Source: Isurus oxyrinchus (taxonomy: Eukaryota). Taken from it: DNA of 64,000 nt. Positions 20,678-64,000 of this stretch are shown here, one piece after another (within the stretch, counting starts at the first letter, position 1; the number at the start of each line of letters is the position of its first letter). The translations under genes and the position numbers were made by a program. The stretch is taken from NCBI GenBank assembly GCA_026770705.1, contig JANJGN010000152.1, positions 248,001 through 312,000 of the forward strand. Direction: 5' to 3'. The notes beneath the pieces are model-generated. The model was given only the letters and a program-made list of their open reading frames with translations. It did no database searches and was not told where the DNA came from.

Positions 20678-20689
20678 CATGCCCCCGGG

Positions 20690-23130
20690 TCCGGACTTCG
20701 GACCCCATGAAGTCTCAAGGCATCTGTCCAATCATGGGGAAGGAAACCTCCTGCTGATTACGACGTACGGCCCTCCCTCAGCTGATGAATCAGTGCTGCT
20801 CCATGTTGAACACCACTTGGAGGAAGCAATGAGAATGGCAAAGGCGCTGAATGTACTCTGGGTGGGGACTTCAATGTCCCATCACCAAGAGTGGCTCGGC
20901 AACACCACTACTGACCGAGCTGGTCGATTCCTAGAGGACATAGCTGCTAGACTGGGTCTGCGGCAGGTGGTGAGGGAAACAACAAGGGGGGGGGGAAAGA
21001 TACTTGACCCCATCCTCAACAACCTGCGTGCCGCAGATGCATCTGTCCATGACAGTATTTGTAGGAGTGACCACCACACGGTCTTTGTGGAGACGAAGAC
21101 CCATCTTCACACTGAAGATATCGTCCATTGTGTTTTGTGGCACTCCCGCCTTGCTAAATGGGATAGATTGCAAACAGATCTAGCAACTCAAGGCTGGGCA
21201 ACCATGAGGCACTGGGGACAATCAGCAGCAGCAGAATTGTACTCGAACACAATCTGTAACATCGTGGCCCGGCATATCCCCTACTCTACTATTAACAAGA
21301 AGCCAAGGGAACAACCCCGGTTGAATGAAGAGTGCAGGAGGGCATGTCAGAAGCAGCAACAGGAATACCTAAAAATGAGGTGTTAACCTGGTGAAGCTAT
21401 AACACAGGACTACTGGCGTGCAAAATAGCATAAACAGCAAGTGATAGACGGAGCCTAGCATTCCCACAACCAACGGGTCTGGTCGAAGCTCTGCAGCCCT
21501 GCCACATCCAGTAGTGAATGGTGGTGGAAAATTAAACAACTCACTGGAGGGGGTTGGTCCAGAAATATCCCAATCCCCAATGATGAGGGAGCCCAGTATA
21601 GCAGTGCAAAAGATAAGACTGAAGCATTCGCAATAATCTTCAGCCAGAAGTGCTGAGTGGATGATCCATCTCGGCCTCCTCCGGAGGTCCCCAGCTTCAA
21701 TGATGTCAGTTTTCACCCAATTCGATTCAGTCCACGTGATATCAAGAAATGGCTGAAGGCACTGGTTGCTGCAAAGGCAATGGGTCCTGACAATATTCTA
21801 GCAATAGCACTGAAGACTTGGGCTCCAGAACTTGCTGCGCCCCTAGCCAGGTTGTTCCAGTACAGTTACAACACTAGCATTTACCTGGATATGTGGAAAA
21901 TTGCCCAAGTACGTCCTGTACACAAAAAGCAGGGCAAGCCCAACCCGGCCAATTTCTGCTCCATCAGTCTACTCTCGAACATCAGTGAAGTGATAGAAGG
22001 AGCCATCAACAGTGCTATCAAGCGGTATTTACTTGGCAATAACCTGCTCACTGCGCTCATTTTGGATTCCATCAAGGTCACTCAGTCCGTGACAGCATTA
22101 CAGCCTTGGTTCAAACTTGGACAAAGAGATGGACTCGAGATGTTAGGTGAAAGTGACTGCCTTTGACATCCAGGCCGAATTTGGCAGTATGGCATCAAGA
22201 AGCCCTAGCAAAACTGGAATAATGGGAATCAGTGGGAAAACTCTCCGCTGTTTGGAGTCATACCTAGCACAAAGGAAGATGGTTATGGTTGTTGGAAGTC
22301 AGTCATCTCAGCCCCAGGACATCAGTTCCTCAGGGTAGTGTCCTGGCCCGACCATCTTCAGCTGCTTCATCAATGACCTTCCTTCCATCTTAACGTCAGA
22401 TGTAGGGATGCTTTCTGATCTTTGCTCAAGGTTCAGCACCATCCACGACTCATCAGATACTGAATCAGTCCGTTTCCAAATGCAGCAAGGGCTGAACAAT
22501 ATCCAGGCTCGGGCTGAGAAGTGGCAAGTCACATTCACGCCACACAAGTGCCAGACAATGACCAACTCCAACAGAATAGAATCTAACTATCGTCCCTTGA
22601 CATTCATTGGCGTTACTAACGCTGAATCCCCCACTATCAAGTACCTGGGGGTTACCATTGACCAGAAACTGAGCTGGGCTAACCATATAAATATTGCAGC
22701 TACAAGAGCAGGTCAGAGGCGAGGAATCCTGCGACGAGTAACTCACCTCCCGACTCCTCAAGGCCTGTCCACCATCTACAAGGCACACGTCAGGAGTGTG
22801 CTGGCGTACACTCCACTTACCTGGGTGAGTGCAGCTCCAACAACACTCAAAAAGCTTGACACTACCCAAGGCAATGCAGCCGGTTTGATTGACAACTCGC
22901 CCACAAACATTCACTCCCTCGACTACGGATGCACATTTGCAGCAGTGTGTACCATCTTCAAGATGCAGTGGAGGAATTCATCAAGCCTCCATAGGCAACA
23001 TCTTCGAAACCCATGACCAATACCATCTAGAAGGGCAAGGTCAGCCGATAGATGGGGACACCACCACCTGGAAGTTCCCCTCCGAGCCACAAACCATTCT
23101 GACCGGGAAATATATTGCCGTTCTTTCTCT
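20690..23130 (+). mobile_element. Non-LTR retrotransposon (CR1/L2-group), decayed endonuclease plus reverse transcriptase
   Basis: ORF pieces with APE motifs (LDPIL, SDHH), KAMGPDNI, ISLLSNISEVIE, KYLGVTIDQKLSW; stops and frameshifts. Confidence 0.9.
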
Positions 23131-23999: not shown

Positions 24000-24690
24000 C
24001 ACCGTACCTTGTCTCTGTTCATGCTGAACAAGGTCCGGTGTCTATTTATATTACACCAATTCATGTCCCTGATCATTAGACAGCAGGCTGCGTCTCAGTT
24101 GTTTCTGTAAAAGGCTCAATCTCAATTGTTAATATACTGGACCAAGGCCATATTACACAAGGCATTCTGTCAGTTATGACTGTATTGAACCATGTCTTGG
24201 CTAATATGGCAATATTCCATGTTTCAATTGTTGCTGCATTAACATTTCTCTCTACTTATACTAAACCAGAACATGTTCCTGTTTGCATTTCAGGAGGCCC
24301 TGTCTGAGTTATTAATACGGGAATCCCTGCCAAATTTATAATAAACTAGAGGATGTCTCAGCTAATGCTGCATCAATCTATGTCTCTGTTTATATCACAC
24401 GATACCCTGTGTCAGTTATTGTTGTGCTATAACATGTCTCTCTCACTGCTGTGCATGTCCACATCTCTGTTTATATTAACCCAGGACCTTTGTTGGTAAT
24501 TACTGCACTAGGCTCTGTCTCAGTTTATATCACACAATTTCCTAAATCAGTTAAAGCTACACTGGGCCCCGTATCTGTTAAAATAACACTGGCCCCTGTT
24601 TCTGTTATGACTGCACTGGCCCATATCTCTGCTTATATTACACTACACCCAGTCTCTGTTATTACTGTATTAGTCTATGCCCCTGTTAAA
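24000..24690 (-). repeat. Old diverged copy of the 27-bp satellite
   Basis: Recurring cctgtctcagtt(t)at(a/t) motifs. Confidence 0.75.
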
Positions 24691-29766: not shown

Positions 29767-29896
29767 NNNNNNNNNNNNNNNNNNNNNNNNNNNNNNNNNN
29801 NNNNNNNNNNNNNNNNNNNNNNNNNNNNNNNNNNNNNNNNNNNNNNNNNNNNNNNNNNNNNNNNNNNNNNNNNNNNNNNNNNNNNNNNNNNNNNNN
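29767..29896. other. Assembly gap (130 N)
   Basis: Run of N. Confidence 1.
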
Positions 29897-32529: not shown

Positions 32530-33810
32530 AAAATGCTGGAAAACCACCACTAAATTCACTCAGCTCCTTCGCCTGCTTCGTACCTGTTCTGATGAGGCCA
32601 AAACAATGCTTCTGACATGCCTTCCTACTTCCTTAAACAAGCTTCCCACCCACTGTGGTTGACAGGGCCCTCAACTGTGTCTGACCTATCTCCCACGTCT
32701 CTGCTTTCACACATTCCTCTCTCTCACAGAATCATAATAGGGTCCCACTTATTCTCTCGTTTCACCTCACCAGCCTCTGCATTCAAAGGATCATCCTCCG
32801 CCATTTCTGCTAACTCCAGCATGGTGCCATCATCAATCACATCTTCCCCTCACCACCACACCCCTCACCACCACACCACCACCCACACCCCCGTAGGGGC
32901 CATTCCCTCTGGGACAGTCTGGTCCAGTCCTCCAACACCTCCAGCACCTCATCCCCTTCCCAAGGCATTTGCCCAAGCAATAAGAGAAGATGCAACACTT
33001 GCCCATTTACCTCCTCCTTCCTCACTATCCAAGGGCCAAATATTCCTTGCAGGTGAAGAACCAATTCATTGCACCTCCTTCAATTTGGCCTCCTGCATTT
33101 GCTACTCCCAATGCGTTCTCCACTTCATCGGGGAGACCATACGCAGACTGGCAGATGGCTTTGTGGAATACCTTCGGTCTGTCTGCAAGTATGACCTAGA
33201 CCTTCCTGTCGCTTGCAATTTCAACACACCATCCTGCTCTCATACCCATATGTTCCTCTTTGACCTGCTGCAATGTTCCAGTGAAGCCCAATGCAAACTG
33301 GAGGAACAACACCTCATCTTCTGATTATGCACTTTACAGCCTTACTCATTTATTCATCCTTTTATCCCTTTTTTAATCCCCATTTCTATTCCTTTTTGTA
33401 CGGTTTTTCCCCAACCACCGCCTCGTCCCCCTACCACACCCCTAAAGGTGCCATCATTACTTGTTCCCTCTTGTTATTTCTCAGTGTGCTGATTCTGGTT
33501 CTGCTATTAACACATTCTGATTTCTTACCTTTATGATTCTATCAGCACCTACTTTAATCTTACCACTACCAGTGACACTCCCTTTTTCTTTTTCCCATGA
33601 TATTTATCAGTCTCACCTTACCCCCACCTATTGCTTGCCTTCTATCCAGACTCACCTGCTCTACTGCGCTTAAACAACAAATGTCATCGCACTTTGAATT
33701 CTATTTCACTCTGAAGAAGAGTCAGATGGTCTCAAAAAGTTAGCTCTTCTTCTCTCACCACAGGTGAGATTTTCCAGCATTTCTTGCTTTTCTTTCAGAT
33801 TTCCAGTGAC
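32530..33810 (+). mobile_element. Decayed Penelope-like element (GIY-YIG region plus 3' end)
   Basis: ORF 32617-33324 ends FIGETIRRLADGFVEYLRSV...PVACNFN...LEEQHLIF. Confidence 0.85.
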
Positions 33811-39800: not shown

Positions 39801-42505
39801 CCTTCAACAGAACTGAGTGAATATTAGGAGAGAGATGAAATATAAGCTGGTTTAAGGTGGGGAAGGGGTGGGGGGAGAGAAGTCGGGGGGTGTTGGTGGT
39901 GGTGTTGGTGTGGTTGTAGGGACAAGCAAGCAGTGATAGAAGCAGTTAATCAAAAGATGTCACAGACAAAAGAACAAAGAGGTGTTGAAGGTGGTGATAT
40001 CTAAACAAATGTGCAAATTAAGAATGGATGGCAGGGCACTCAAGGTACAGCTCTAGTGGGGGTGGGGTGGAAAGACTAGCTGGGTATAAAAAAATTAAAA
40101 ATAATGGAAATAGGTGGGAAAAGAAAAATCTATATAAATTATTGGAAAAACAAAAGGAAGGTGGAAGAAACAGAAAGTGGGTGGGGATGGAGGAGGGAGT
40201 TCAAGATCTAAAGTTGTTGAATTCGATATTCAGTCCAGAAGGCTGTAAAGTGCCTAGTCGGAAGATGAGGTGCTGCTCCTCCAGTCTGCGTTGGGCTTCA
40301 CTGGAACAATGCAGCAAGCCAAGGACAGACATGTGGGCAAGAGAGCAGGGTGGAGTGTTAAAATGGCAAGTGACAGGGAGGTTTGGGTCTTTCTTGCGGA
40401 CAGACCGCAGGTGTTCTGCAAAGCGGTCGCCCAGTTTACGTTTGGTCTCTCCAATGTAGAGGCGACCACATTGGGAGCAACGAATGCAGTAGACTAAGTT
40501 GGGGGAAATGCAAGTGAAATGCTGCTTCACTTGAAAGGAGTGTTTGGGCCCTTGGACGGGGAGGAGAGAGGAAGTGAAGGGGCAGGTGTTGCATCTTTTG
40601 CGTGGGCATGGGGAGGTGCCATTGGTGGGGGCTGAGGAGTAGGGGGTGATGGAGGAGTGGACCAGGGTGTCCCGGAGGGAACAATCCCTACAGAATGCCA
40701 CCGGTTGGGGGGGGGGGGGGGTGCGGTGGGGTAGGGGTGGTGAAGGGAAGATGTGTTTGATGGTGGCATCATGCTGGAGTTGGCGGAAATGGCTGTGATA
40801 TCTTTTGATTATCTGCTCCTATCACTGCTTGCTTGTCCCTACAACCACACCACCGCCTCCCCCCACCACAACTTCTCTCCCCCTCCCCCAACCCACCCAC
40901 CCCCCCACCCCCACCTTAAACCAGCTTATATTTCACCCCTCTCCTAATATTCACTCAGTTCTGTTGAAGGGTCATGAGGACTCGAAACGTCAACTCTTTT
41001 CTTCTCCGCCAATGCTGCCAGACCTGCTGAGTTTTTCCAGGTAATTCTGTTTTTGTTTTGGATTTCCAGCATCCGCAGTTTTTTTGTTTTCATAACTGAG
41101 ACAGTGTTCAGTGCAGTGATTACTGATACAGGCTCTAGGTAAATATTAACTGAGACAGGGCCTGGTGCAGTGATTACAGTGACAGGGCCTAGTTTAATAT
41201 AAACTGAGACAGGGCCTGGTGCAGTGTTCACTGATACAGGACATAGATAAATATAACTGGGACAGGGGTTGTTGCAGTGATTACTGCTGCAGGGACTAAA
41301 TAAATACAAACTGAGACTTGGTCGAGTGCAGAGATAACTGAGACAGGGCCAAGATCAATAAAAATTGAGGCAGGGTCTAGTGCACTGATTAATGATACAG
41401 GTCTAGATTAATATAAACTCAGACAGTTTCTAGTGCAGTGATTACTGACACAGGGTCTAGATTGATATATACTGAGGCAGGGCATACTGCAGTGATTCCT
41501 GTTTCAGGGTCTTGAGTAATATAAACTGAGACAGGCTCTAGTGCAGAGATTACTGATACAGGGTCTAGCTTAATATAAACTGAGGCAGTTTCCAGAGCAG
41601 TGATTACTGATACAGGCTCTAAATTAATATAAACTGAGACAGCGGCTAGTGCAGTGATTACTGATACAGGGACTAGATTAATATGAAGTAAGACAGGCTA
41701 TCATGCTCGTATTACTGATACAGGTACTATATTAACATAAATTGAGCCTGCATCTAATGCAGAGATTACTAATACAGGGTCTAAATCAATATAAATTGAG
41801 ACACTGCCTTGGACATTGAATACTGATACAAGGTCTTGATTAATAGAAGCTGAGGCAGGAGCAAGTGTAATGATTACTGATACAGGCTCTAATTTGATAT
41901 AAACTGAGGCAGAGCATAGTGCAGTGATTACTTATATAGGGTCAAGATAAGTATAAGCTGGGACAGAGTCAAGTGCAATGATTACTGATTAAGGTTATAG
42001 ATTAATATAACTTGAGATGGGCTCTACTGCTGTGATCACTGATTCCAGCTCTTGATTAATATAAACTAAGACAGGCTCTACTGCAGTGATTACTGTTTCA
42101 GGGTCTAAACTAATAGAAACTGAGACAGGGTTTGTGTAGTGATTACTGAAGATTAATATAAACTCAGGCAGGGTCTAGTGCAGTGATTCAGCATCTAGAT
42201 TACTAAAAACTGAGACTGGATCCAGTGCAGTGTTTACTGATACAGCGTCTAGATTTATATAATTTGAGGCAGGGTCTAGCGCAGAGAAGACAGATACAGG
42301 GTCTGGATTATTATAGACTGAAACAGGGTCTGGTGCAGTGATTACTGACATAGCGTCTAGATTAATACAAACTGAGACAGGGTCTACTGCAGTGATTACT
42401 GACACAGTGTCTAAATTAATATAAACTGAGACAGTGTCTAGTGCAGTGATTCCTGAATTCTGCTCTGGACGAATATAAACTGAGACAGGGCCAAGTGCAA
42501 TAATT
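33810..42505 (+). repeat. 27-bp/54-bp dimeric satellite array (CAGGGTCTAGTGCAGTGATTACTGATA + CAGGGTCTAGATTAATATAAACTGAGA)
   Basis: Roughly 270 monomers; contains an inverted block (34468-34992) and a Penelope insertion. Confidence 0.97.
39715..41093 (-). mobile_element. Penelope-like element, 5'-truncated, with inverted terminal repeats
   Basis: ORF 40701-40201 with CxxC pairs and GIY-YIG (LVYCIRCSQCGRLYIGETKRKLGDRFAEH...LEEQHLIFRLGTLQPSGLN); about 39716-39965 inverted vs about 40795-41055; flanking aactgagacagt is a possible TSD. Confidence 0.95.
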
Positions 42506-50610: not shown

Positions 50611-50630
50611 TGAAGGCTGAGAAATATACA

Positions 50631-50810
50631 TAATTATATGTACCAATCATTATCAATTCACAAAGATAAATAATTATATTCACCAATTAGCATCCATTCA
50701 TGCAGATAAATAATTATATTCCCCAATTACCATCCATTCACAAAGGCAAATAATTATATTCATCAATTATCATCCATTCACAAAGATAAATAATTGCTTT
50801 AACCAATTAT
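50631..50810. repeat. 40-bp minisatellite, 4.5 copies
   Basis: taattatattcaccaatta.catccattcacaaagataaa at 50631, 50671, 50711, 50751, 50791. Confidence 0.95.
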
Positions 50811-51992: not shown

Positions 51993-53694
51993 AAGGGTAA
52001 AGAGGCAGAAAAATCACACAAACACACATGTTTTTCTATTTCAAAATGTATCCTCTCTCTGAGTCCTCTCTGCTAGTCCGTCTGTAATTCTTTCTATCCA
52101 TCCATCCATCCATCACAATATTATGATGTGTTGGAGAGATCCTCAATGAGCTATTGATGCCAACAGGGTGTCAGAGAAGCTGGATAACTTTTCTTTCCTG
52201 GGAGATTGGAACAGTTCACATAGGTTCACAGCTTAGAAAAATGAAACTGACTCCAGTGTTGTTGCTCGGTAGATTTGTCATAAATAAGCCTTGTTGACAA
52301 TGTTAAGGGTTTGAAGTTGGCATGCAGCCAAGCGGTCAGTACTGAGGAAACAGATCTTTCATTTACTGCACAAACCGGCAGAGGCTTCCTGTAAATAACT
52401 TTGGGCATTCGAGCCTCCCTGACTGCAGCCGGCTGGCTTGCTGCCAAATACTCTGTGGGGCAGATTAGCCTGGATATGAATGAACAAAATGGGATTCAGC
52501 AATTCAAACAATATTGCTTTCAGTCATACATGGAATACACATTTTAAATGGCATTTTATCCAGCGAAATATTTTAATGAGTGCCGTGTTCACTGAGGTTA
52601 AACACGATCAGAAAATATTAAATTGACCATTTACCAGTTAATTTATATTATTTCTAAGTAAAGGGCATCCCAGTTATTAAAGCCTGTTTATTAAGAACTT
52701 CATGAAGTGCGAGAGAGCAATATTGATGGTCCCAATGTCCCAGTCCAATGAAATGAGTGCAATGGCAAAACTTAAAAGAAATTAAATTGAATGAAATTTG
52801 TTGAATTGCCTTAATTCCGCAGGAATTCCTTGAATATCTCCGAGTTGTGCACCTCATTTAACCTGAGGCGCCTCTTATTCCTGATTAGCGCCGTGTACTG
52901 TACAGTTTAATTTGTGCTGATTTCGATTATTTAACAGTCCCTCTCATAGCTGCCAATAAGTGGAGAAATGATCAGTTCATGACCCGCTTCAGTGGAAGAT
53001 AAAACATTTATTCTTGTGCTATTGTGTAATATGCCCCAAAGTCCTGATATCCTGTGTTCCCAATACCAGTGAATGGTAGATAGCCGGTGGCCAATAGAAT
53101 TAGCTGCAATGATTTGGATGATGAAGGATAACTTTACTGATCTCCGTGTCCGTTCTGATTCATTAACTTCTCTGTCAAAAGTTGATGTAAAATTTTACGT
53201 TTCTCTGTCAATTTACTGTTTAGTTATCAGGCCGGTGGTCTTCTTTTTCCGCTAATTTCCACAGGGCTGTCTTCGGGTCAGGAGCAATTCGAGAAATGCA
53301 AGGAGGGACATTGTATAATGTGAGGAGTTTCTTCTTATCTCTGGACCCAAACTGTATGGCCATAGCCACCCATTTTGTAAATAATATCACTTTGTTCATC
53401 GCCCGCATTTAATTACATAAATCAATAATAATTCCAATGACTAATGATACTTTATTGCTGTAATGAGATAGAGACCCGGAGTTGCTGCAAAACAGACTGA
53501 CAGCCCCTTTATTCCCTGTTAATGTAACTTATTTTTTTTAGATTCAACCCGCTGTGAAGTAGTGCAGAAATAACTGGACTTAATTTACATTTGAATTAAT
53601 CATTTTTATGAACTATATCCCGATACAGATAAAATGCCCACTTTTAACAATAACCTATTGTAAATATCTGAGTCCATTCTGTTGGGGATGTGTA

Positions 53695-53785
53695 AGATGG
53701 GGCGTGGATCCTGTCGCCGCCTCTACCAGGGAATCAACAGGCGGCGCCTGGAATCCCGCCCCCTTCTGCCGGGTATTTAAATGCC
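53695..53785 (+). promoter_or_regulatory. IgH VH promoter: GC boxes and TATA (TATTTAAA 53774-53781), no octamer seen
   Basis: ggggcgtgg and cccgcccc upstream of a TATA about 95 bp before the ATG. Confidence 0.6.
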
Positions 53786-53872
53786 GCTCACTGGGACCGG
53801 AATCCAACAGTCCGGGAGCTGGTTTGTTCACTGAGTTCTGGACAGAACCATTTTCCCCAGATGACCAGAAGG

Positions 53873-54350
53873 ATGAGGCCGGCGATTTCTCTCAGTTTGT
53901 TGCTGACTTTCTTATCCCGTGAGTAGTTTTTATTGTCCAAGTCTCTCACTGTTACTGTCTGTGTTAGTCTCTCTCTAGAATGTTACAGAGTCAAGAATCA
54001 TTTCAACAGGGTTAATCTTCGGGGTTTTTGATATATTTTTACAGGTGTCCAGTCGGATGTTGTGTTGACTCAGCCAGAGGCAGAGACCGGGCGTCCCGGA
54101 GGCACCCTGAGACTGACCTGTAAAACCAGCGGCTTCGATCTTGACAGCTCCTACATGAACTGGGTCCGACAGGTTCCCGGACAAGGGCTGGAATGGCTGG
54201 TTTACTACGGTGATTCATCGGACAACAGCTATGCCCCAGCAATTAAGAATCGATTTACGGCGTCCAAAGACACTTCAAGGAGCATCTTCTCCTTGGACAT
54301 GACGAACTTGAAGATTGAAGACACCGCCATCTATTACTGTGCCAGAGAGT
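53873..54350 (+). CDS. IGHV: IgM-type heavy-chain V gene: leader exon 53873-53918 plus V exon 54045-54350, open
   Basis: [71 protein letters not shown]...RFTASKDTS...[10 protein letters not shown]; GT/AG phase-1 intron; elasmobranch IgM VH hallmarks. Confidence 0.97.
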
Positions 54351-54389
54351 CACAGCGAAAGGAACCAGGGCTGGACCCGAACAAGAACA
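54351..54389 (+). promoter_or_regulatory. VH 23-RSS (CACAGCG-23-ACAAGAACA)
   Basis: Spacer counted. Confidence 0.95.
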
Positions 54390-54755
54390 GATCGAGAGGG
54401 ACTCAACAACTTCCATCGTAATCTGACGGTCAGTACTTGTTTTAAATGTATTATTAACTGTAATGATCAGACCCAGACAACAAGCCACTTGTGACAAAAG
54501 TAAAACAGCAAATTTAACAGGAAACCTAACAAACCAATCGATATAATGGGCTGAGCTTTTCGCTGTGTTTATATTTACTGATAAGTTTCCGCAATTACAG
54601 ACCTGGATATAATACCCATTTTAACCTGCCTGACACTTGGAGGAGGGTCTCTATTCATTGAGTTTTGTAAATTGCTGCATGAATTCTAAACCGGATCAGA
54701 AGTAAACGACTATTTGAAGTGAAGATTGGGATGCAGCACTGAACAGAGCAGGTGC

Positions 54756-54835
54756 AGTTTTTGTGCGTCTGTATTTCACTGTGATACTACAGTGGGTCAC
54801 AGTGCTGTGCACAGCGACATCCTCATACAAAAACC
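54756..54835 (+). other. IGHD: DH1 segment (ATACTACAGTGGGT, 54784-54797) with 5' 12-RSS and 3' 22-RSS
   Basis: AGTTTTTGT-12-CACTGTG / CACAGTG-22-ACAAAAACC. Confidence 0.96.
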
Positions 54836-55137
54836 TCAGCGAAAGAGTTTGTTCAAACTGGTGATCAATATCACAGCAGGAACGTCAAAGAAAATGAGAG
54901 TTAAGTAAAATAATGGGTAGAGGTTTGCAAAAAGGTATAAAAGTCTTCCGCTTTGTTCGTGTTGACGGACACTCTAAATCTGCACAGAGTCTTTAAAAGT
55001 ATTCCAATTGCATTTATAAATATATTCACCAGCACAGCTTGAAATATCTCACCGATTCGCTCTTAAGTGAGTCGGAATCAGGTTTTTGTGAGTGCAGTGA
55101 AATTAAATCTTTGTATTTTCAGTGAACAGTCTGCCGC

Positions 55138-55219
55138 AGTATTTGACATGGTGTGTCTCACTGTGATAACTGGGATGGCCCACAGTGTTACATTCCCTGG
55201 GCTGTGCCATACAATAACT
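55138..55219 (+). other. IGHD: DH2 segment (ATAACTGGGATGGCC, 55166-55180) with 5' 12-RSS and 3' 23-RSS
   Basis: AGTATTTGA-12-CACTGTG / CACAGTG-23-ACAATAACT. Confidence 0.94.
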
Positions 55220-55547
55220 GTCCCTGCACGAAAAAGACAGAAATCCACCATTATTTTAAATATTCATAAGTCAGGGGCAAAGTAAGTTCACGATAAATCT
55301 TCACGAAATTATATTTGCGTTGTAGTTATCTTTAGGTATTCATCAATGATCCTCATGTTTTACATTTCACAGAGTAACATATGAACATGTTCTTGTAAGC
55401 AGCAACCGATTAATGTATAATTATCACAGCTTTTCCATCTTAAACCATGTTTTTTGGGCAGCGCTGGACATAACTAATACTTCACTGTAAATATAGTTGG
55501 GTTGTAAAAGCGAGCACTGACCCAGGCAGACTCAATTAATGCTGAGG

Positions 55548-55625
55548 GGTTTTTGTATTGACAGTAACTGCTGTGGATCGCTACGGACTACTGGGGACAA
55601 GGGACCATGGTGACGGTGACTGCAG
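55548..55625 (+). other. IGHJ: JH segment (55576-55625, IATDYWGQGTMVTVTA) with 12-RSS and GTAAG donor
   Basis: GGTTTTTGT-12-TGCTGTG; WGQG motif; splice donor at 55626. Confidence 0.96.
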
Positions 55626-58600
55626 GTAAGAACCATGCACTTATTTAGTAACTGCTTTATTTGAGTCTTTGCTTTATATTTTTGTCTATTTTAATAACTG
55701 ATTCGTTTACTGAAACTTGGGTTTGCTGGATTCTGTATGGAGATATTTTACAATGTTTCATGTGTTTCTGCTGAAATTGAGTTATATAATTCGGCTGTGT
55801 CTCAACAAAAAGGGATTCAATCCCTGGCTGTGGTGATTTGGTGTTTATCTGCTGAATTTACTATGTGGCCGGGTTATGTGAAGTATCTAACATTTGTGAA
55901 AACAGTTTGACGTTCCTGCAATGTTTAATCTCGGTGACATATAATGGCTGCGGGTTTTACCATCTGTTGCACAAAGGTTTAAATATGTTTGAAATCAAAC
56001 CCAATATCAGTAACATATGCTTAAGTTTCAATGTTAATTTATTGAACATGTTCCGCCTACTCACAATGCTGTTGACATTATTCCATATTTCTCTTTAGTT
56101 TAATTATTCATTAATTTGGTGACGAGCGGGTTGTCTGGTTTTGATATTGAGATTTTCTTGCAATGTTACATTGGATTCTGTTGGAATAGTTTGTGGAATT
56201 GAGCTGCTTCTCCATGAAACGGGTTTCAGTCCCTCAGTGATGTGTTTTGGTGTTTTTCTCCTGATGAGATTGTGTGTCTGGGTGACTTTGAACAAGTAGA
56301 ATTTGTGGAACAGTTTGGCGGTTCTGCATTGTTTCTGCTTTGTTTAAACTCGGTGATATTGAGCGGTTACACGTTTTGTGATTGAAAGGAAACAGTCTAC
56401 GCGTTTGTTTCTGCTTGAAGCGCCATTGTCAGCAGAAAACGGGCAGAATTCAGAAATGGGGGAAAAGTGTTTAAAGATGCGTTAGAGCATTTTGTTTTTA
56501 TTTTAAGTCATAACTGCAGATTAAACTAAACCATGGATTAAGATGCTCAATCAGAACATAATTCGTTACTGCAATAAGAAACTATATAATTAACAAGTTT
56601 TCAAATTGTAGAGTAAAATTAATATAATTCAAGCAATTATAATGTGGTAATATTTCTCCATATTGACTGAACAGCTTTCATGTTAACCTAATTGATCATT
56701 AATCGCCTTTCACAATTCTGCTGTGCACTGCGCACTATTAACTTGATCGGGAAAATTTTTAGGGTGGAATCATTTTGTGATTATGTATGAAAACATTTCA
56801 ATGAGAGTATACTGATTCTACAGAATTGTTCACTTCCACAAGAGATTTTGAATTCTTTAAATCCCTGATAACGTTTGTATTGATTTAAAAACGAGTTTGA
56901 CATTGCAGGTTGGCAATATGTCTATCCGGTTATTACATTCTTTCTGTGCAGCCGTAACCATATTATTCCTTCAATGTCATTGGGATTGGATAGCGAGATA
57001 ATTGTCACTAATCTAATCGTAAACAGTTTTCTGGGGGGTGGAATTCGCTGGCAGTCAAGGAATTGTTCTTATTTTTTTTGAACTGCAGGAAGGTGCAAAC
57101 TGCGTATGAATAGAGATTGACAAGGAAACGCTTGAAATTCGAACAGATTAATTTAATTGCAAACATTAATGTTAGTTTTGAACTTAATAACAACATTCTG
57201 TCTCCCATTGCTGTACTGTGCACAGGACAGAATTATAGGAGAAGAACAGATTATATCTGAAATTCATGCTTAATACTTATTAACTATTAAATTGAAGAGC
57301 AAAATCTCTAATCGTTTTGCTGGTTATATTTCAGTGGCGCAGGTGATCTGAATAATTTTTTCTCATCAAATTGTATACTGATTAATTTGGATCGTCTTTC
57401 AATGAACAATATATTTAACAATTAAATTATAGTGATTTTATCAAGGAAGCACTTTTATTGATAATAAGTAACTGCGAGGAACATTTTTTTACATGTAATT
57501 TTGAGTTAAGACAAGTTTGCTTTAGCAAACAAATGATGTTACAGTTCGTAGACACTTGATGTGATGTTACCTCGGCCAGATTTGAAAGTATTTAAAATAT
57601 TCCACTCATAAATTCGTCTTGTGAATTACTCGATGAGAATAGATGGAATTTATGATTTCTCAATGCGTTCAGAAACACGCATAGTTTACAATTTTGTATG
57701 TTAAAACAGAGCAGTGGAAGTAAAAGTAAAATAGTAAATAGTGATTAAATTTAAGTAAAATTGATATTCTTGCCTGAAGGTTACCATCTCGTAATTTGAA
57801 GTTTATTGTTTAACATTGTTTCAGTGTCAAGTTGATTTAAATAAACCCCAATTATTTCACAAAGTACCAGGGAGAAACAAATTTTCAATTTTTGAAAACC
57901 ATATTTTTCATATTGTAGAGTAGAAATCAATTAACAAGGAAATAAATTGACAATAACAAAATAATTAACTTACAATATAATATTAGTGATAATTAATTCA
58001 ACATAAATGAACTCCAACAGTTAAATAGTATACTGTTCATTATTGTGAATGCAAATTCTCAGTGGAGAGAATTTTTAATTTTATCCAAAATGAATTTAGA
58101 AAAGAATATTTTTCTTATTCAGCTGTGCTCTGATCGATAAGGTGTTTCATCTCGATGATTTTATTGGTTATATTTATCCCTAAAATCAAATCAAATCAGC
58201 AGGTAGTTGGTTTCAATGTGAATGTTTTCTGATTTGTTTAATTCTTACCCTGTCATTGATTCTCTGTTACGGACACCAAATTACCCTGAATCTGTAATAT
58301 TTGCTGTGCTCACTTTCAGGGTAACTTAAATCTTACATTGTTTGGAGATTGGAGATTGACAGGGAGAATTAGTTGGACTTCAAAGGGAGTTTTGAAATGA
58401 AAATCAGATTAATTTCAAAGAAGTTATGGAATAATTGGAGTAAATTGACCATTGATTAATTAGAATCAAACAGCTTGAATGAAATAGACAGATTGAACAG
58501 ATCTATCTGCTGGGAACTCGCTTGTTGCACCATTTGTGTCTGTTCTGTTTCTGTGCGTGTGGTCACTGTGCTGGGACCAGAAATCTTCTTGACTGGTTGT

Positions 58601-60254: not shown

Positions 60255-61420
60255 ACACACTCAGTCTCTTTACCACACACCTCACTCGCTCACTCTCTCT
60301 GTCACGCACGCTTTCTCTCACACACGTGCACTCTCTCTCACATGCACTCTCTCTGACAGACACACACTCTCTATTTCTCCCTCTATCACACACATGCACC
60401 ACACACACACACACGCACACAAATATTCTTTCTTTCACACACAAACTCTCTTTAACATGCACACACTGTCTCTCACGCATTTCCTCTCTTCTACTCACAC
60501 TATCAAACAGGCACTCACATTCTCTCATACACATACATTCACAACTACACACTGTCTTACACATGTGCCCACTTACTCTCTCACACACACATGCACTCAC
60601 TCTTTCTCATACATGTACTCTCCTACACACATTCTCTCTCTCACACATGCATACCCACTCTCTCTCTCACATACATGTACCCTCTCTCCCACACACAGAC
60701 ACACTCTCACCTATGCACACACACGCTCTCCATTCTCTCTCTCACACACATACAGACACATCATACACTCTCTCACATGAGCATCCTCATTGTCTCTCTC
60801 TCACGCACACACACAAACACAAACACATTCCATCTCAAACATACACACTCTGTTTCTCTCACACATGCACTGTCTCTCATTCTCTCTTTCTCTCTCCCTC
60901 TGACACACACCGTGGCTCACTCTTTCACACACTCTTTCTCTCTCTCACACACTCACACGTTCTCTCTCTCACACACACTCTCTCCCCCCACACACGCGTA
61001 CTCTCTCTCTCACACACTCTCTCTCACACACTTATACTACCTTTCACTCACACCCGTACACATATACTTCCTCTCCCTCTCTCTCTCACTGTCACACACA
61101 CAGTCGTTCTCTCTCTCACACACACACACACACAGTCGCTCTCTCTTATACACACATACTCTCTCTCCCACAACACACACTTTCTCTATCTCAGACATTC
61201 TTACAAGTATGCTCCCTATGACACACACATACATACACTCTCCCTCTTTCTCACACAGACACTTTCTCTCTCTCACACACACACAGTGGCTCTCTCACAC
61301 ACACACATACACACACACACGCGTGCACTCTCTCACTCTCTCTCTCTCCCTCTCTCACACTCACTCTCTCACACACACACACTCTCTCTCACACACTTTT
61401 TTTTCTCTCTCTCTCTCACA
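60255..61420. repeat. CA/CT-rich low-complexity tract
   Basis: Direct reading. Confidence 0.95.
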
Positions 61421-62424: not shown

Positions 62425-62885
62425 CACCCTCACTACCCACAATAACTCACCCTCACTCACTCACCCTCACTCACTCACCCTCGCTCACTCACCCAACTTC
62501 ATTCATCCTCATTCACTCACCATCAATTGCTCATTCACCCGCACTCACTCACCCAGCCTCATTCACACTCATTCACCCACCCTCAGTCACCCACCCTTAT
62601 TGATCCACCCTCAATTATCCTCACTCAAACTCACTCACCCACCCATCGTCGCTCACCTACATTCACTTACACTCAATAACTCATCCACCCACCCTCACAC
62701 ACCCACTCACCCTCACTCATATCCCCACCCTCACATAACCACCAACCCTCACTCACCCACATTCAGAAACCCACCCACGCTCACTCACCACCAACCCTCA
62801 CTCATTCCTTCATTCATCCACGCACCCCCGCTCTGTCATTCAGTCATCCTCACCCTGTCAATCAGGCACACGCTCACTCACACGA
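62425..62885. repeat. (CACT/CACC)n low-complexity tract
   Basis: Direct reading. Confidence 0.9.
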
Positions 62886-63019: not shown

Positions 63020-64000
63020 GAGAGGCGGGGCTAAAGCGCAGAGAGCCTGGGGGAAAGGGCAGGCAGGTGGGGGGAAGGAAAGAGAGTTGGGGAAAAGGGT
63101 AGCGATCCAGTGGAAAGTGCATATAGATGAGGCAAAGGAATGGGCAGAGCCGGGGGAAGGGCAGGCACCCGTGGAATAAGTGCAGAGAGCTATGGGAGAA
63201 AGGGTAGAGAGGCGGGAGGGGGAAAGGGCAGGGCGGCAGAGATGGGAAAGGGCAGAGAGGCGGGAGGGGGAAAGGGCAGAGAGAGGAGAGGGGGCAAGGT
63301 CAGAGTGGGGGTATGGGCAAGGGCAGAGAGGGGGGAGTGGGCAAGGGCAGAGAGTGGGGATTGGGCAAGGGCAGAGGGACGAGAGGGGGGAAAGGGCAGA
63401 GAGGCGGAGGGGGGAAGGGCAGAGCAGCGGAGGGGGAAAGAGCAGAGAGGCAGGAGGGGGAAAGAGCAGAGAGGCGGGAGAGGGAAAGGGCAGTGAGGGG
63501 ACAAAATGGTTAATGAACTAGGGAAAAAGTCAGTGAGCCGGACAAAAGCACAGAGTCGTGGAGTAAATGCAGAGAGCTGGGGGAGAAAGGACAGAGAGGT
63601 GGGAGGGGGAAAGAGTAAAGAGGAGGCGAGCAAAGGGCAGAGAGGCGGGACGTGGAAAGGGCAGAGAGGCGGGACGTGGAAAGGGCAGAGAGGCGGGACG
63701 TGGAAAGGGCAGAGAGGCGGGACGTGGAAAGGGCAGAGAGGCAGGAGGAGGAAAGGGCAGAGAGGCAGGATGTGGAAAGGGCAGAGAGGCGGGACGTGGA
63801 AAATGCAGAGAGGCGGGACGTGGAAAGGGCAGAGAGGCAGGAGGGGGAAAGGGCAGAGAGGCGGGAGGTGGAAAGGGCAGAGAGGCGGGACGTGGAAAGG
63901 GCAGAGAGGCGGGACGTGGAAAGGGCAGAGAGGCAGGAGGGGGAAAGGGCAGAGAGACGGGAGGGGGAAAGGGCAGAGAGGCGGGAGGTGGAAAGGGCAG
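63020..64000 (+). repeat. G-rich 24-bp minisatellite GGGCAGAGAGGCGGGACGTGGAAA, running off the window end
   Basis: Degenerate from about 63020, highly regular from about 63630. Confidence 0.95.

What the first reader, a model, noticed from the sequence alone, without database searches (positions are those of the whole stretch)
55166..55625. Candidate germline RAG hybrid-joint inversion that swapped the DH2 and JH recombination signals
Seen: D2 has a 3' 23-RSS and JH a 12-RSS. Read on the minus strand, the JH RSS is CACAGCA-GTTACTGTCAAT-ACAAAAACC-CCTCAGC. Its post-nonamer flank matches the D1 3' RSS flank (ACAAAAACC-TCAGC, 54827-54840), so it looks like a D 3' signal turned round. Both coding ends meet the heptamer with a 4-bp palindrome (D2 ...GG|CC; JH GA|TC...), as 2-nt P additions would give. 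The JH 5' end is atypical (IATDYW rather than YFDYW-like). Knowledge, from memory and needing verification: horn-shark IgM clusters have 12-D2-12 and a 22-spacer JH, with a CACAGCA-GTTACTGTCA.. signal 3' of D2 and a CACAGTG-TTACATTCCCTGGGCTG.. signal at JH; here these sit in swapped positions. Inference: RAG cut at D2 3' and JH 5' in a germ cell and re-ligated the 395-bp signal fragment (55181-55575) inverted. This would be a natural example of RSS-polarity switching that left a still-rearrangeable cluster.
Basis: partly seen in the sequence, partly recalled or inferred. Interest (0 to 1): 0.92.

Follow-up and report, generated by a model that had tools for sequence, protein, structure and literature searches.

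The report
Flipped D2–JH spacer in shark IgM cluster
In one shark antibody heavy-chain gene cluster, the 395-base stretch between the D2 and JH pieces lies upside-down compared with sister clusters. This swaps their "cut-here" signals, as expected if the RAG enzyme once cut and re-ligated it in the germ line; one such case in sharks was already described in 1988.

Summary
The window holds one intact IgM-type VH-D1-D2-JH minilocus (53873-55625). Its recombination signals read V-23 / 12-D1-22 / 12-D2-23 / 12-JH.

Public DNA contigs from four studies were laid on the stretch. Sister clusters carry the 55181-55575 interval in the opposite orientation. Homology stops exactly at the two heptamer ends, at 55181 and 55575, and the heptamer-to-JH junction contigs are multi-copy. 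The window's layout is therefore a derived inversion, not the family norm.

There is no target-site duplication. Only the two new coding ends finish in 4-nt palindromes (GGCC, GATC).

Not shown:
- any independent read or contig that carries the window's own two junctions;
- inheritance;
- that the palindromes are P nucleotides;
- that the cluster rearranges or is expressed.

The kind is not new. Lewis & Wu (2000) describe a horned-shark cluster (Kokubu 1988) with an inverted D1-D2 interval as a documented germline hybrid joint that swapped signals. This is a second example at a new position. It gives JH a 12-signal and a TCR-delta-like grammar that would allow D-less joins. Other readers of this scan noted this same stretch, and other RAG scars elsewhere in this genome.

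The parts
53873..53918 (+). Leader exon of VH ([15 protein letters not shown]..), GT donor at 53919
   Evidence: spliced to 54045 it gives an open 117-codon leader+V reading frame
54045..54350 (+). VH exon (..[22 protein letters not shown]), intact
   Evidence: translation; 81% to a Chiloscyllium punctatum V, 76% to Heterodontus HV01, Pfam PF07686
54351..54389 (+). VH 23-RSS CACAGCG-23-ACAAGAACA
54756..54783 (-). D1 5' 12-RSS (CACAGTG-12-ACAAAAACT on minus strand)
54784..54797 (+). D1 coding ATACTACAGTGGGT
54798..54835 (+). D1 3' 22-RSS CACAGTG-22-ACAAAAACC (then TCAGC)
55138..55165 (-). D2 5' 12-RSS (CACAGTG-12-TCAAATACT on minus strand; weak nonamer)
55166..55180 (+). D2 coding ATAACTGGGATGGCC; 3' end GGCC is a palindrome
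55181..55575 (.). 395-bp RSS-terminated D2-JH interval, inverted relative to paralogous clusters
   Evidence: opposite-strand joints 55166|55575, 55180|55586 and 55181|55586; five paralog contig pieces in three runs end exactly at 55181 with 36-92 further letters beyond
55181..55219 (+). 23-RSS now 3' of D2 (CACAGTG-23-ACAATAACT); in paralogs this end abuts JH
55548..55575 (-). 12-RSS now 5' of JH (CACAGCA-12-ACAAAAACC on minus strand); in a paralog this end follows the D2 5' heptamer side
55576..55625 (+). JH coding (IATDYWGQGTMVTVTA), GT donor at 55626; 5' end GATC is a palindrome; paralog homology starts at 55585-55589

Best explanation
This is a shark IgM VH-D1-D2-JH minilocus. Its ancestor had the usual 12-D2-12 ... 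23-JH layout. RAG cut at the D2 3' signal and the JH signal in a germ-line cell. Instead of forming a D2-J coding joint and an excised signal circle, the cell joined each coding end to the other segment's signal end, giving two hybrid joints. The 395-bp signal-ended fragment (55181-55575) was thereby put back inverted. D2 now carries the former JH 23-signal and JH carries the former D2 12-signal. Shown: the signal layout, the inversion relative to paralogs, breaks at the heptamer ends, and the absence of a target-site duplication. Inferred: that RAG was the nuclease, that the event was in the germ line and is inherited, and the consequence. The consequence would be that the cluster still obeys the 12/23 rule for D2-to-J, and that V(23)-to-J(12) and D1(22)-to-J(12) joins also become legal, so D2 or both D segments can be skipped (a TCR-delta-like grammar).
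For: The layout was read directly and by scan.

laid Logan contigs of four runs (four studies, two organism labels) at 80% likeness or more. It gave three opposite-strand joints, all at the two signal/coding borders: 55166|55575 (X1), 55180|55586 (X1) and 55181|55586 (X4). Pieces about 86-91% alike from X2, X4 and X14 end exactly at 55181, the first heptamer base, and run on for 36-92 letters that are not D2. This fits '...23-RSS heptamer | JH' in the paralogs. The junction contigs have depths of 210 (X1) and 698 (X4), against roughly 20-60 for single-copy pieces, so the canonical junction is multi-copy and the window is the exception.

The flanks TGGCC and GATCG are not a direct repeat, so there is no target-site duplication. 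Only the two new coding ends finish in 4-nt palindromes, 2 of 2 against 0 of the 4 other ends.

The JH-side signal has a D1-3'-type post-nonamer flank. V, JH and all signals are intact.

For precedent and mechanism, Lewis & Wu 2000 (PMC2193153) describe a horned-shark cluster with an inverted D1-D2 interval as a germline hybrid joint. Lee et al. 2000 (PMC2193156) show RAG-type joining in shark germ cells.
Against: No listed contig bridges 55180/55181 or 55575/55576 colinearly. No run holds more than 35% of the stretch's 31-mers. At about 40 positions across the whole stretch, (nearly) all contigs of all four runs differ from the window (table 3). The window's own arrangement therefore has no independent support beyond the assembly.

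The joint table does not state topology. I inferred it from the pieces in table 8.

The coding sides did not align across the joints (D2 55167-55180, JH 55576-55585), so processing at the coding ends cannot be reconstructed. One germline-joined paralog carries ..ACTGGGGTGGCGAA.. (table 5c). This hints that D2 ends in TGGC, which would make 'GG|CC' not a P addition.

A break inside the shared CACAG of the two heptamers would look identical, so RAG is not proven by sequence alone.

The primary papers were not held.
Confidence: 0.7

Rival explanations
1. The inversion is not in the germ line. It is an assembly error, or a somatic RAG product from lymphocyte-containing tissue that entered the assembly.
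For: No independent contig was shown to carry the window's two junctions, and no run holds more than 35% of the stretch's words. Hybrid joints do form somatically (PMC2193153).
Against: The only inverted repeat at the two ends is 5 bp (CACAG), which is far too short to confuse an assembler. No N run is near; the only gap is 29767-29896. A single somatic event would be a tiny minority of reads and would not become the consensus. Both signals and both coding ends are intact.
Confidence: 0.13
2. The inversion is real and inherited but was not made by RAG, for example by microhomology-mediated repair or template switching using the CACAG/CTGTG inverted repeat of the two heptamers.
For: The first five heptamer bases are identical in both signals, so a break anywhere inside them gives the same sequence.
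Against: Two independent breaks would both have to fall on the only two RAG cleavage sites in the interval. Both coding ends finish in palindromes. Germline RAG activity in sharks is documented, and other RAG scars are noted in this genome (unchecked).
Confidence: 0.07
3. There was no event in this cluster: 12-D2-23 / 12-JH is a normal or ancestral layout of this species or of a whole subfamily of its clusters.
For: A subfamily that shares the inversion is not excluded.
Against: Multi-copy paralog contigs show the opposite orientation at both borders. First-reader notes on other clusters of this genome report (12)DD(12)-(23)J (unchecked). To my knowledge, published shark clusters are 12-D2-12/23-J.
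Confidence: 0.06
4. RAG excised the signal-ended fragment and re-inserted it by transposition.
For: The fragment is RSS-terminated, as a RAG transposition substrate is.
Against: There is no 3-5 bp target-site duplication: the flanks are ..TGGCC and GATCG... Re-insertion exactly between the same two coding ends is what a hybrid joint predicts, not a transposition.
Confidence: 0.02

Closest known systems
Horned-shark (Heterodontus francisci) IgH cluster with an inverted D1-D2 interval (Kokubu et al. 1988, as described by Lewis & Wu 2000, PMC2193153)
   Same: Germline V-D-D-J-C minilocus. An RSS-terminated intersegment fragment is inverted relative to a sister cluster. It is interpreted as a germline hybrid joint that swaps 12- and 23-spacer signals.
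   Different: That case lies between D1 and D2. This one lies between D2 and JH, in another species, so a JH acquires a 12-signal and direct V-J joining becomes legal. The 1988 paper itself was not held, so details could not be compared.
Somatic hybrid joints of V(D)J recombination (Lewis et al. 1988, Cell; cited in PMC2193153)
   Same: A coding end is joined to the partner's signal end. Two such joints in one reaction invert the signal-ended fragment. Base loss or addition occurs at the coding side.
   Different: Those were seen in lymphoid cells and on substrates. This one is fixed in a genome assembly and presumed inherited.
Germline-joined shark Ig genes (Lee et al. 2000, PMC2193156; VD-J, VDJ and V-DDJ clusters)
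   Same: A product of RAG-type activity in germ cells of cartilaginous fish. Joined paralogs of this very family appear in the public contigs (joints 54340->55589 and 54783->55585).
   Different: Those are coding joints that remove the interval and reduce diversity. Here nothing is deleted and the cluster stays split.
Canonical shark IgM minilocus V-23 / 12-D1-22(23) / 12-D2-12 / 23-JH (my own knowledge; layout of paralogs supported)
   Same: Leader, VH, D1, D2, JH, spacing of about 400 bp, and the V, D1 and D2-5' signals.
   Different: The D2 3' and JH signals are exchanged. D2 is no longer obligatory under the 12/23 rule.
TCR-delta / TCR-beta signal grammar (V-23, 12-D-23, 12-J; established knowledge)
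   Same: Identical spacer grammar, which permits D skipping and, in TCR-delta, D-D joins.
   Different: Here the grammar sits in an Ig heavy-chain cluster, by secondary inversion rather than by descent.

Membership tests
Shark IgM VH-D1-D2-JH minilocus | Split leader plus an open VH exon ending in YYCAR, followed by a 23-RSS | tested here: met
   V homology
Shark IgM VH-D1-D2-JH minilocus | Two short D segments, each flanked by signals, about 400 bp apart | tested here: met
Shark IgM VH-D1-D2-JH minilocus | JH with the WGQGT motif and a splice donor | tested here: met
   (IATDYWGQGTMVTVTA, GT at 55626)
Shark IgM VH-D1-D2-JH minilocus | Cmu exons downstream | not testable with these tools
   The window ends at 64000 inside the J-C intron. 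Earlier notes s1-866871 and s1-866983 place Cmu just beyond it (unchecked).
Shark IgM VH-D1-D2-JH minilocus | Canonical signal layout 12-D2-12 / 23-JH | tested here: not met
   12-D2-23 / 12-JH. This is the variant feature.
Germline RAG hybrid-joint inversion (RSS swap) | Interval inverted relative to sister clusters while the flanks are colinear | tested here: met
   three opposite-strand joints plus the pieces in table 8; topology was inferred from the pieces
Germline RAG hybrid-joint inversion (RSS swap) | Breakpoints at the heptamer/coding borders, with both signals intact | tested here: met
   homology ends at 55181 and 55575, which are the outer heptamer bases; intact heptamers and nonamers
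Germline RAG hybrid-joint inversion (RSS swap) | No target-site duplication (distinguishes it from transposition) | tested here: met
Germline RAG hybrid-joint inversion (RSS swap) | Coding-end processing (trimming, P nucleotides) at the two joints | tested here: inconclusive
   GGCC and GATC are palindromes at both ends only, but the ancestral ends are unknown. A joined paralog suggests D2 ends ..TGGC (table 5c).
Germline RAG hybrid-joint inversion (RSS swap) | Present in non-lymphoid or germ-line DNA and inherited | tested here: inconclusive
   no listed contig carries the window's own junctions; the tissue and identity of the assembled animal are unknown

The most novel reading that the evidence does not exclude
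The inverted cluster is inherited, active and expressed. Because V-23 can now meet JH-12 directly, it makes D-less or single-D IgM heavy chains with very short CDR3s. It would then be a natural experiment showing, in a living species, how one germline RAG hybrid joint converts an IgH-type signal grammar into a TCR-delta-type one, which is the step long postulated for how 12/23 polarity came to differ between antigen-receptor loci.
Probability: 0.3. Interest if true: 0.7.

Novelty: new member of a known kind. Interest (0 to 1): 0.55.

Why it matters
Signal polarity differs between antigen-receptor loci: V-kappa carries 12 and V-lambda 23, while JH carries 23 and TCR J segments carry 12. Germline hybrid joints are the textbook proposal for how that arose, but the proposal rests on essentially one documented natural case (horned shark, D1-D2). 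A second case, at D2-JH, would strengthen the idea that RAG keeps remodelling shark Ig loci. It would also supply a cluster whose altered grammar makes a concrete, testable prediction in repertoire data: D-less V-J and V-D1-J joins from an identifiable V/J pair.

Tried and rejected
- **Self-BLAST of 53800-56200 against the window:** no paralogous cluster is present, so no in-window comparison was possible.
- **The look-up of encoding contigs:** I wanted it to fetch clusters of Chiloscyllium, Scyliorhinus and Rhincodon found through the V exon.
- **Papers not held:** Kokubu 1988 (PMC454840), Hsu 2016 (PMC4874517), Anumukonda 2022 (PMC9590256) and Zhu 2011 (PMC3190574). The text of Malecek 2008 does not spell out the shark signal layout.
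- **Full-text search for the spacer strings:** no relevant paper.
- **Metagenome scans:** a JH pattern and the V protein both found nothing.
- **Earlier-findings look-ups:** they gave only titles.
- **RSS-like hit at 24414-24453:** read and dismissed as chance inside a repeat.
- **Transposition:** rejected, because there is no target-site duplication.
- **Two independent spacer-length changes:** rejected, because the whole interval matches paralogs in reverse complement.
- **Expression:** not tested.

Full report
**What is there.** The window contains a single IgM-type heavy-chain minilocus and no second copy (self-BLAST).

Its parts, read directly, are:
- leader exon 53873-53918;
- VH exon 54045-54350, an open frame running [25 protein letters not shown]...YYCARE;
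- D1, 54784-54797;
- D2, 55166-55180;
- JH, 55576-55625, which translates as IATDYWGQGTMVTVTA and is followed by a GT donor at 55626.

The V exon is 81% identical to a Chiloscyllium punctatum V and 76% identical to the Heterodontus francisci HV01 V region. Earlier notes of this scan place Cmu just beyond the window's end (unchecked).

**The signals.** A heptamer/nonamer scan and direct reading give:

| Segment | Signal |
|---|---|
| V | CACAGCG-23-ACAAGAACA |
| D1 5' | CACAGTG-12-ACAAAAACT |
| D1 3' | CACAGTG-22-ACAAAAACC |
| D2 5' | CACAGTG-12-TCAAATACT |
| D2 3' | CACAGTG-23-ACAATAACT (55181-55219) |
| JH | CACAGCA-12-ACAAAAACC (55548-55575, minus strand) |

The scan found 30 loose hits in 64 kb against 2-16 in shuffles. 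The six good signals are clustered and ordered, so this is not chance.

I therefore used the one read-laying run.

- *Runs available.* Twenty public runs from nine studies, under two main organism labels, hold 26-35% of the stretch's 31-mers, and none holds more.
- *What was laid.* Logan contigs of four runs from four studies were laid at 80% likeness or more, so that paralogous clusters would show.
- *Joints.* The joint table lists exactly three opposite-strand joints, all at the two signal/coding borders: 55166|55575 (X1), 55180|55586 (X1) and 55181|55586 (X4).
- *Pieces.* Five contig pieces about 89-91% alike, from X2, X4 and X14, cover the interval and stop exactly at 55181, the first base of the heptamer. 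Each runs on for 36-92 letters that do not continue into D2. These are records 11, 17, 18, 19 and 28 of table 8.

This is what a canonical paralog predicts. Its interval is the reverse complement of the window's, its 23-signal heptamer abuts JH, and its 12-signal follows D2. The heptamer-to-JH junction contigs have word depths of 210 (X1) and 698 (X4), against about 20-60 for pieces that look single-copy. The canonical junction is therefore multi-copy and the window's arrangement is the exception.

The topology of each joint is not printed by the tool. I inferred it from the pieces in table 8. The alternative topology, a long D2 that runs into the reverse complement of the JH 5' end, has no supporting piece.

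**Mechanism.**
- The breaks lie at the outer heptamer bases on the signal side, at 55181 and 55575.
- Both signals are intact.
- The flanks (..TGGCC, GATCG..) form no direct repeat, so RAG transposition is unlikely.
- Of the six coding ends in the cluster, only the two at the proposed joints finish in 4-nt palindromes, GGCC and GATC. About 1 in 16 random ends would.
- The signal now at JH has the same post-nonamer letters as the D1 3' signal (ACAAAAACC..CTCAGC). The match is short but scores above all 200 shuffles.

Together these fit a double hybrid joint. RAG cleaves the D2 3' signal and the JH signal, and each coding end is then ligated to the other segment's signal end.

Lewis & Wu (PMC2193153) describe exactly this outcome. 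[quoted passage not shown] Lee et al. (PMC2193156) showed RAG-type joining in shark germ cells.

The same public contigs contain joined relatives of this family:
- a V-to-J joint with the same 33 inserted letters in X1 and X4;
- a 12-RSS-DDJ joint in X2 and X4 (tables 5 and 5c).

Earlier notes of this scan report retained signal joints in this genome's NAR-TCR cassettes (unchecked).

**What is not shown.**
- No listed contig crosses 55180/55181 or 55575/55576 colinearly.
- At about 40 positions spread over the whole 2.4 kb, nearly all contigs of all four runs differ from the window (table 3). The exact cluster may therefore be absent from, or diverged in, those animals. Its junctions rest on the assembly alone.
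- An assembler error is unlikely. The only inverted repeat at the ends is 5 bp, and no gap is near. A somatic event would not become the consensus. Neither was excluded.
- The coding sides did not align across the joints, so trimming and P additions cannot be reconstructed. A joined paralog with ..ACTGGGGTGGCGAA.. hints that D2 may end in TGGC, which would weaken the "GG|CC" reading.
- Paralog JH homology starts at 55585-55589. The first roughly 10 nt of this JH (GATCGCTACG) are therefore either family-specific or added.
- A break within the shared CACAG of the heptamers by a non-RAG route would look the same.
The primary papers were not held.
- Expression was not tested.

**Consequence (inferred).** D2-23 with 12-JH still satisfies the 12/23 rule, so the cluster should rearrange. 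V-23 with 12-JH and D1-22 with 12-JH also become legal. Unlike canonical clusters, this one could make V-J, V-D1-J and V-D2-J joins, which is a TCR-delta-like grammar.

**Verdict.** The inversion relative to paralogs is supported, and RAG and germ-line origin are probable but unproven. It is a new member of a known kind, being the second natural example and the first at D2-JH. Interest is moderate.

Noticed in passing
window 54340->55589 and 54783->55585 (joints in public contigs): Germline-joined relatives of this cluster appear in DNA contigs. One is a V-to-J joint carrying the same 33 inserted letters in runs X1 and X4 (different studies and organism labels). The other is a D1-5'-RSS-to-J joint with 21 inserted letters in X2 and X4. 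These are inherited VDDJ-type and V-DDJ-type IgM genes.
   Followed up: partly
window 60291-61419, 62429-62801, 63194-64000: The JH-Cmu intron carries long CT/CA-rich arrays, followed by a G-rich 24-bp tandem array of more than 33 copies that runs off the window. Other readers noted it as switch-region-like.
   Followed up: no
window 53300-53873: There is no exact Ig octamer (ATGCAAAT/ATTTGCAT) in the 570 nt upstream of the leader ATG; the nearest matches have one mismatch, at 53583 and 53589. A TATA-like TATTTAAAT sits at about 53783 inside a GC-rich patch. This may bear on whether the cluster is transcribed.
   Followed up: no
window 20679-23016 (+), 32617-33324 (+), 40201-40701 (-): Long ORFs with a retroelement look, including reverse-transcriptase-like stretches and two related ..IGET.R.L.DRF.EH..EEQHLIF.. 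ORFs on opposite strands. These are interspersed repeats upstream of the Ig cluster.
   Followed up: no
window 50622-50810: A 40-bp AT-rich tandem repeat of 4.7 copies, 3 kb upstream of the V leader.
   Followed up: no
window 29767-29896: The only N run in the window (130 N). It is far from the cluster and was left as it is.
   Followed up: no
window 54351-54389 vs 55181-55219: The V 23-spacer and the 23-spacer now 3' of D2 share a ..C(A/T)GGGCTG.. core. This may reflect conserved 23-spacer positions and was not tested for significance.
   Followed up: no
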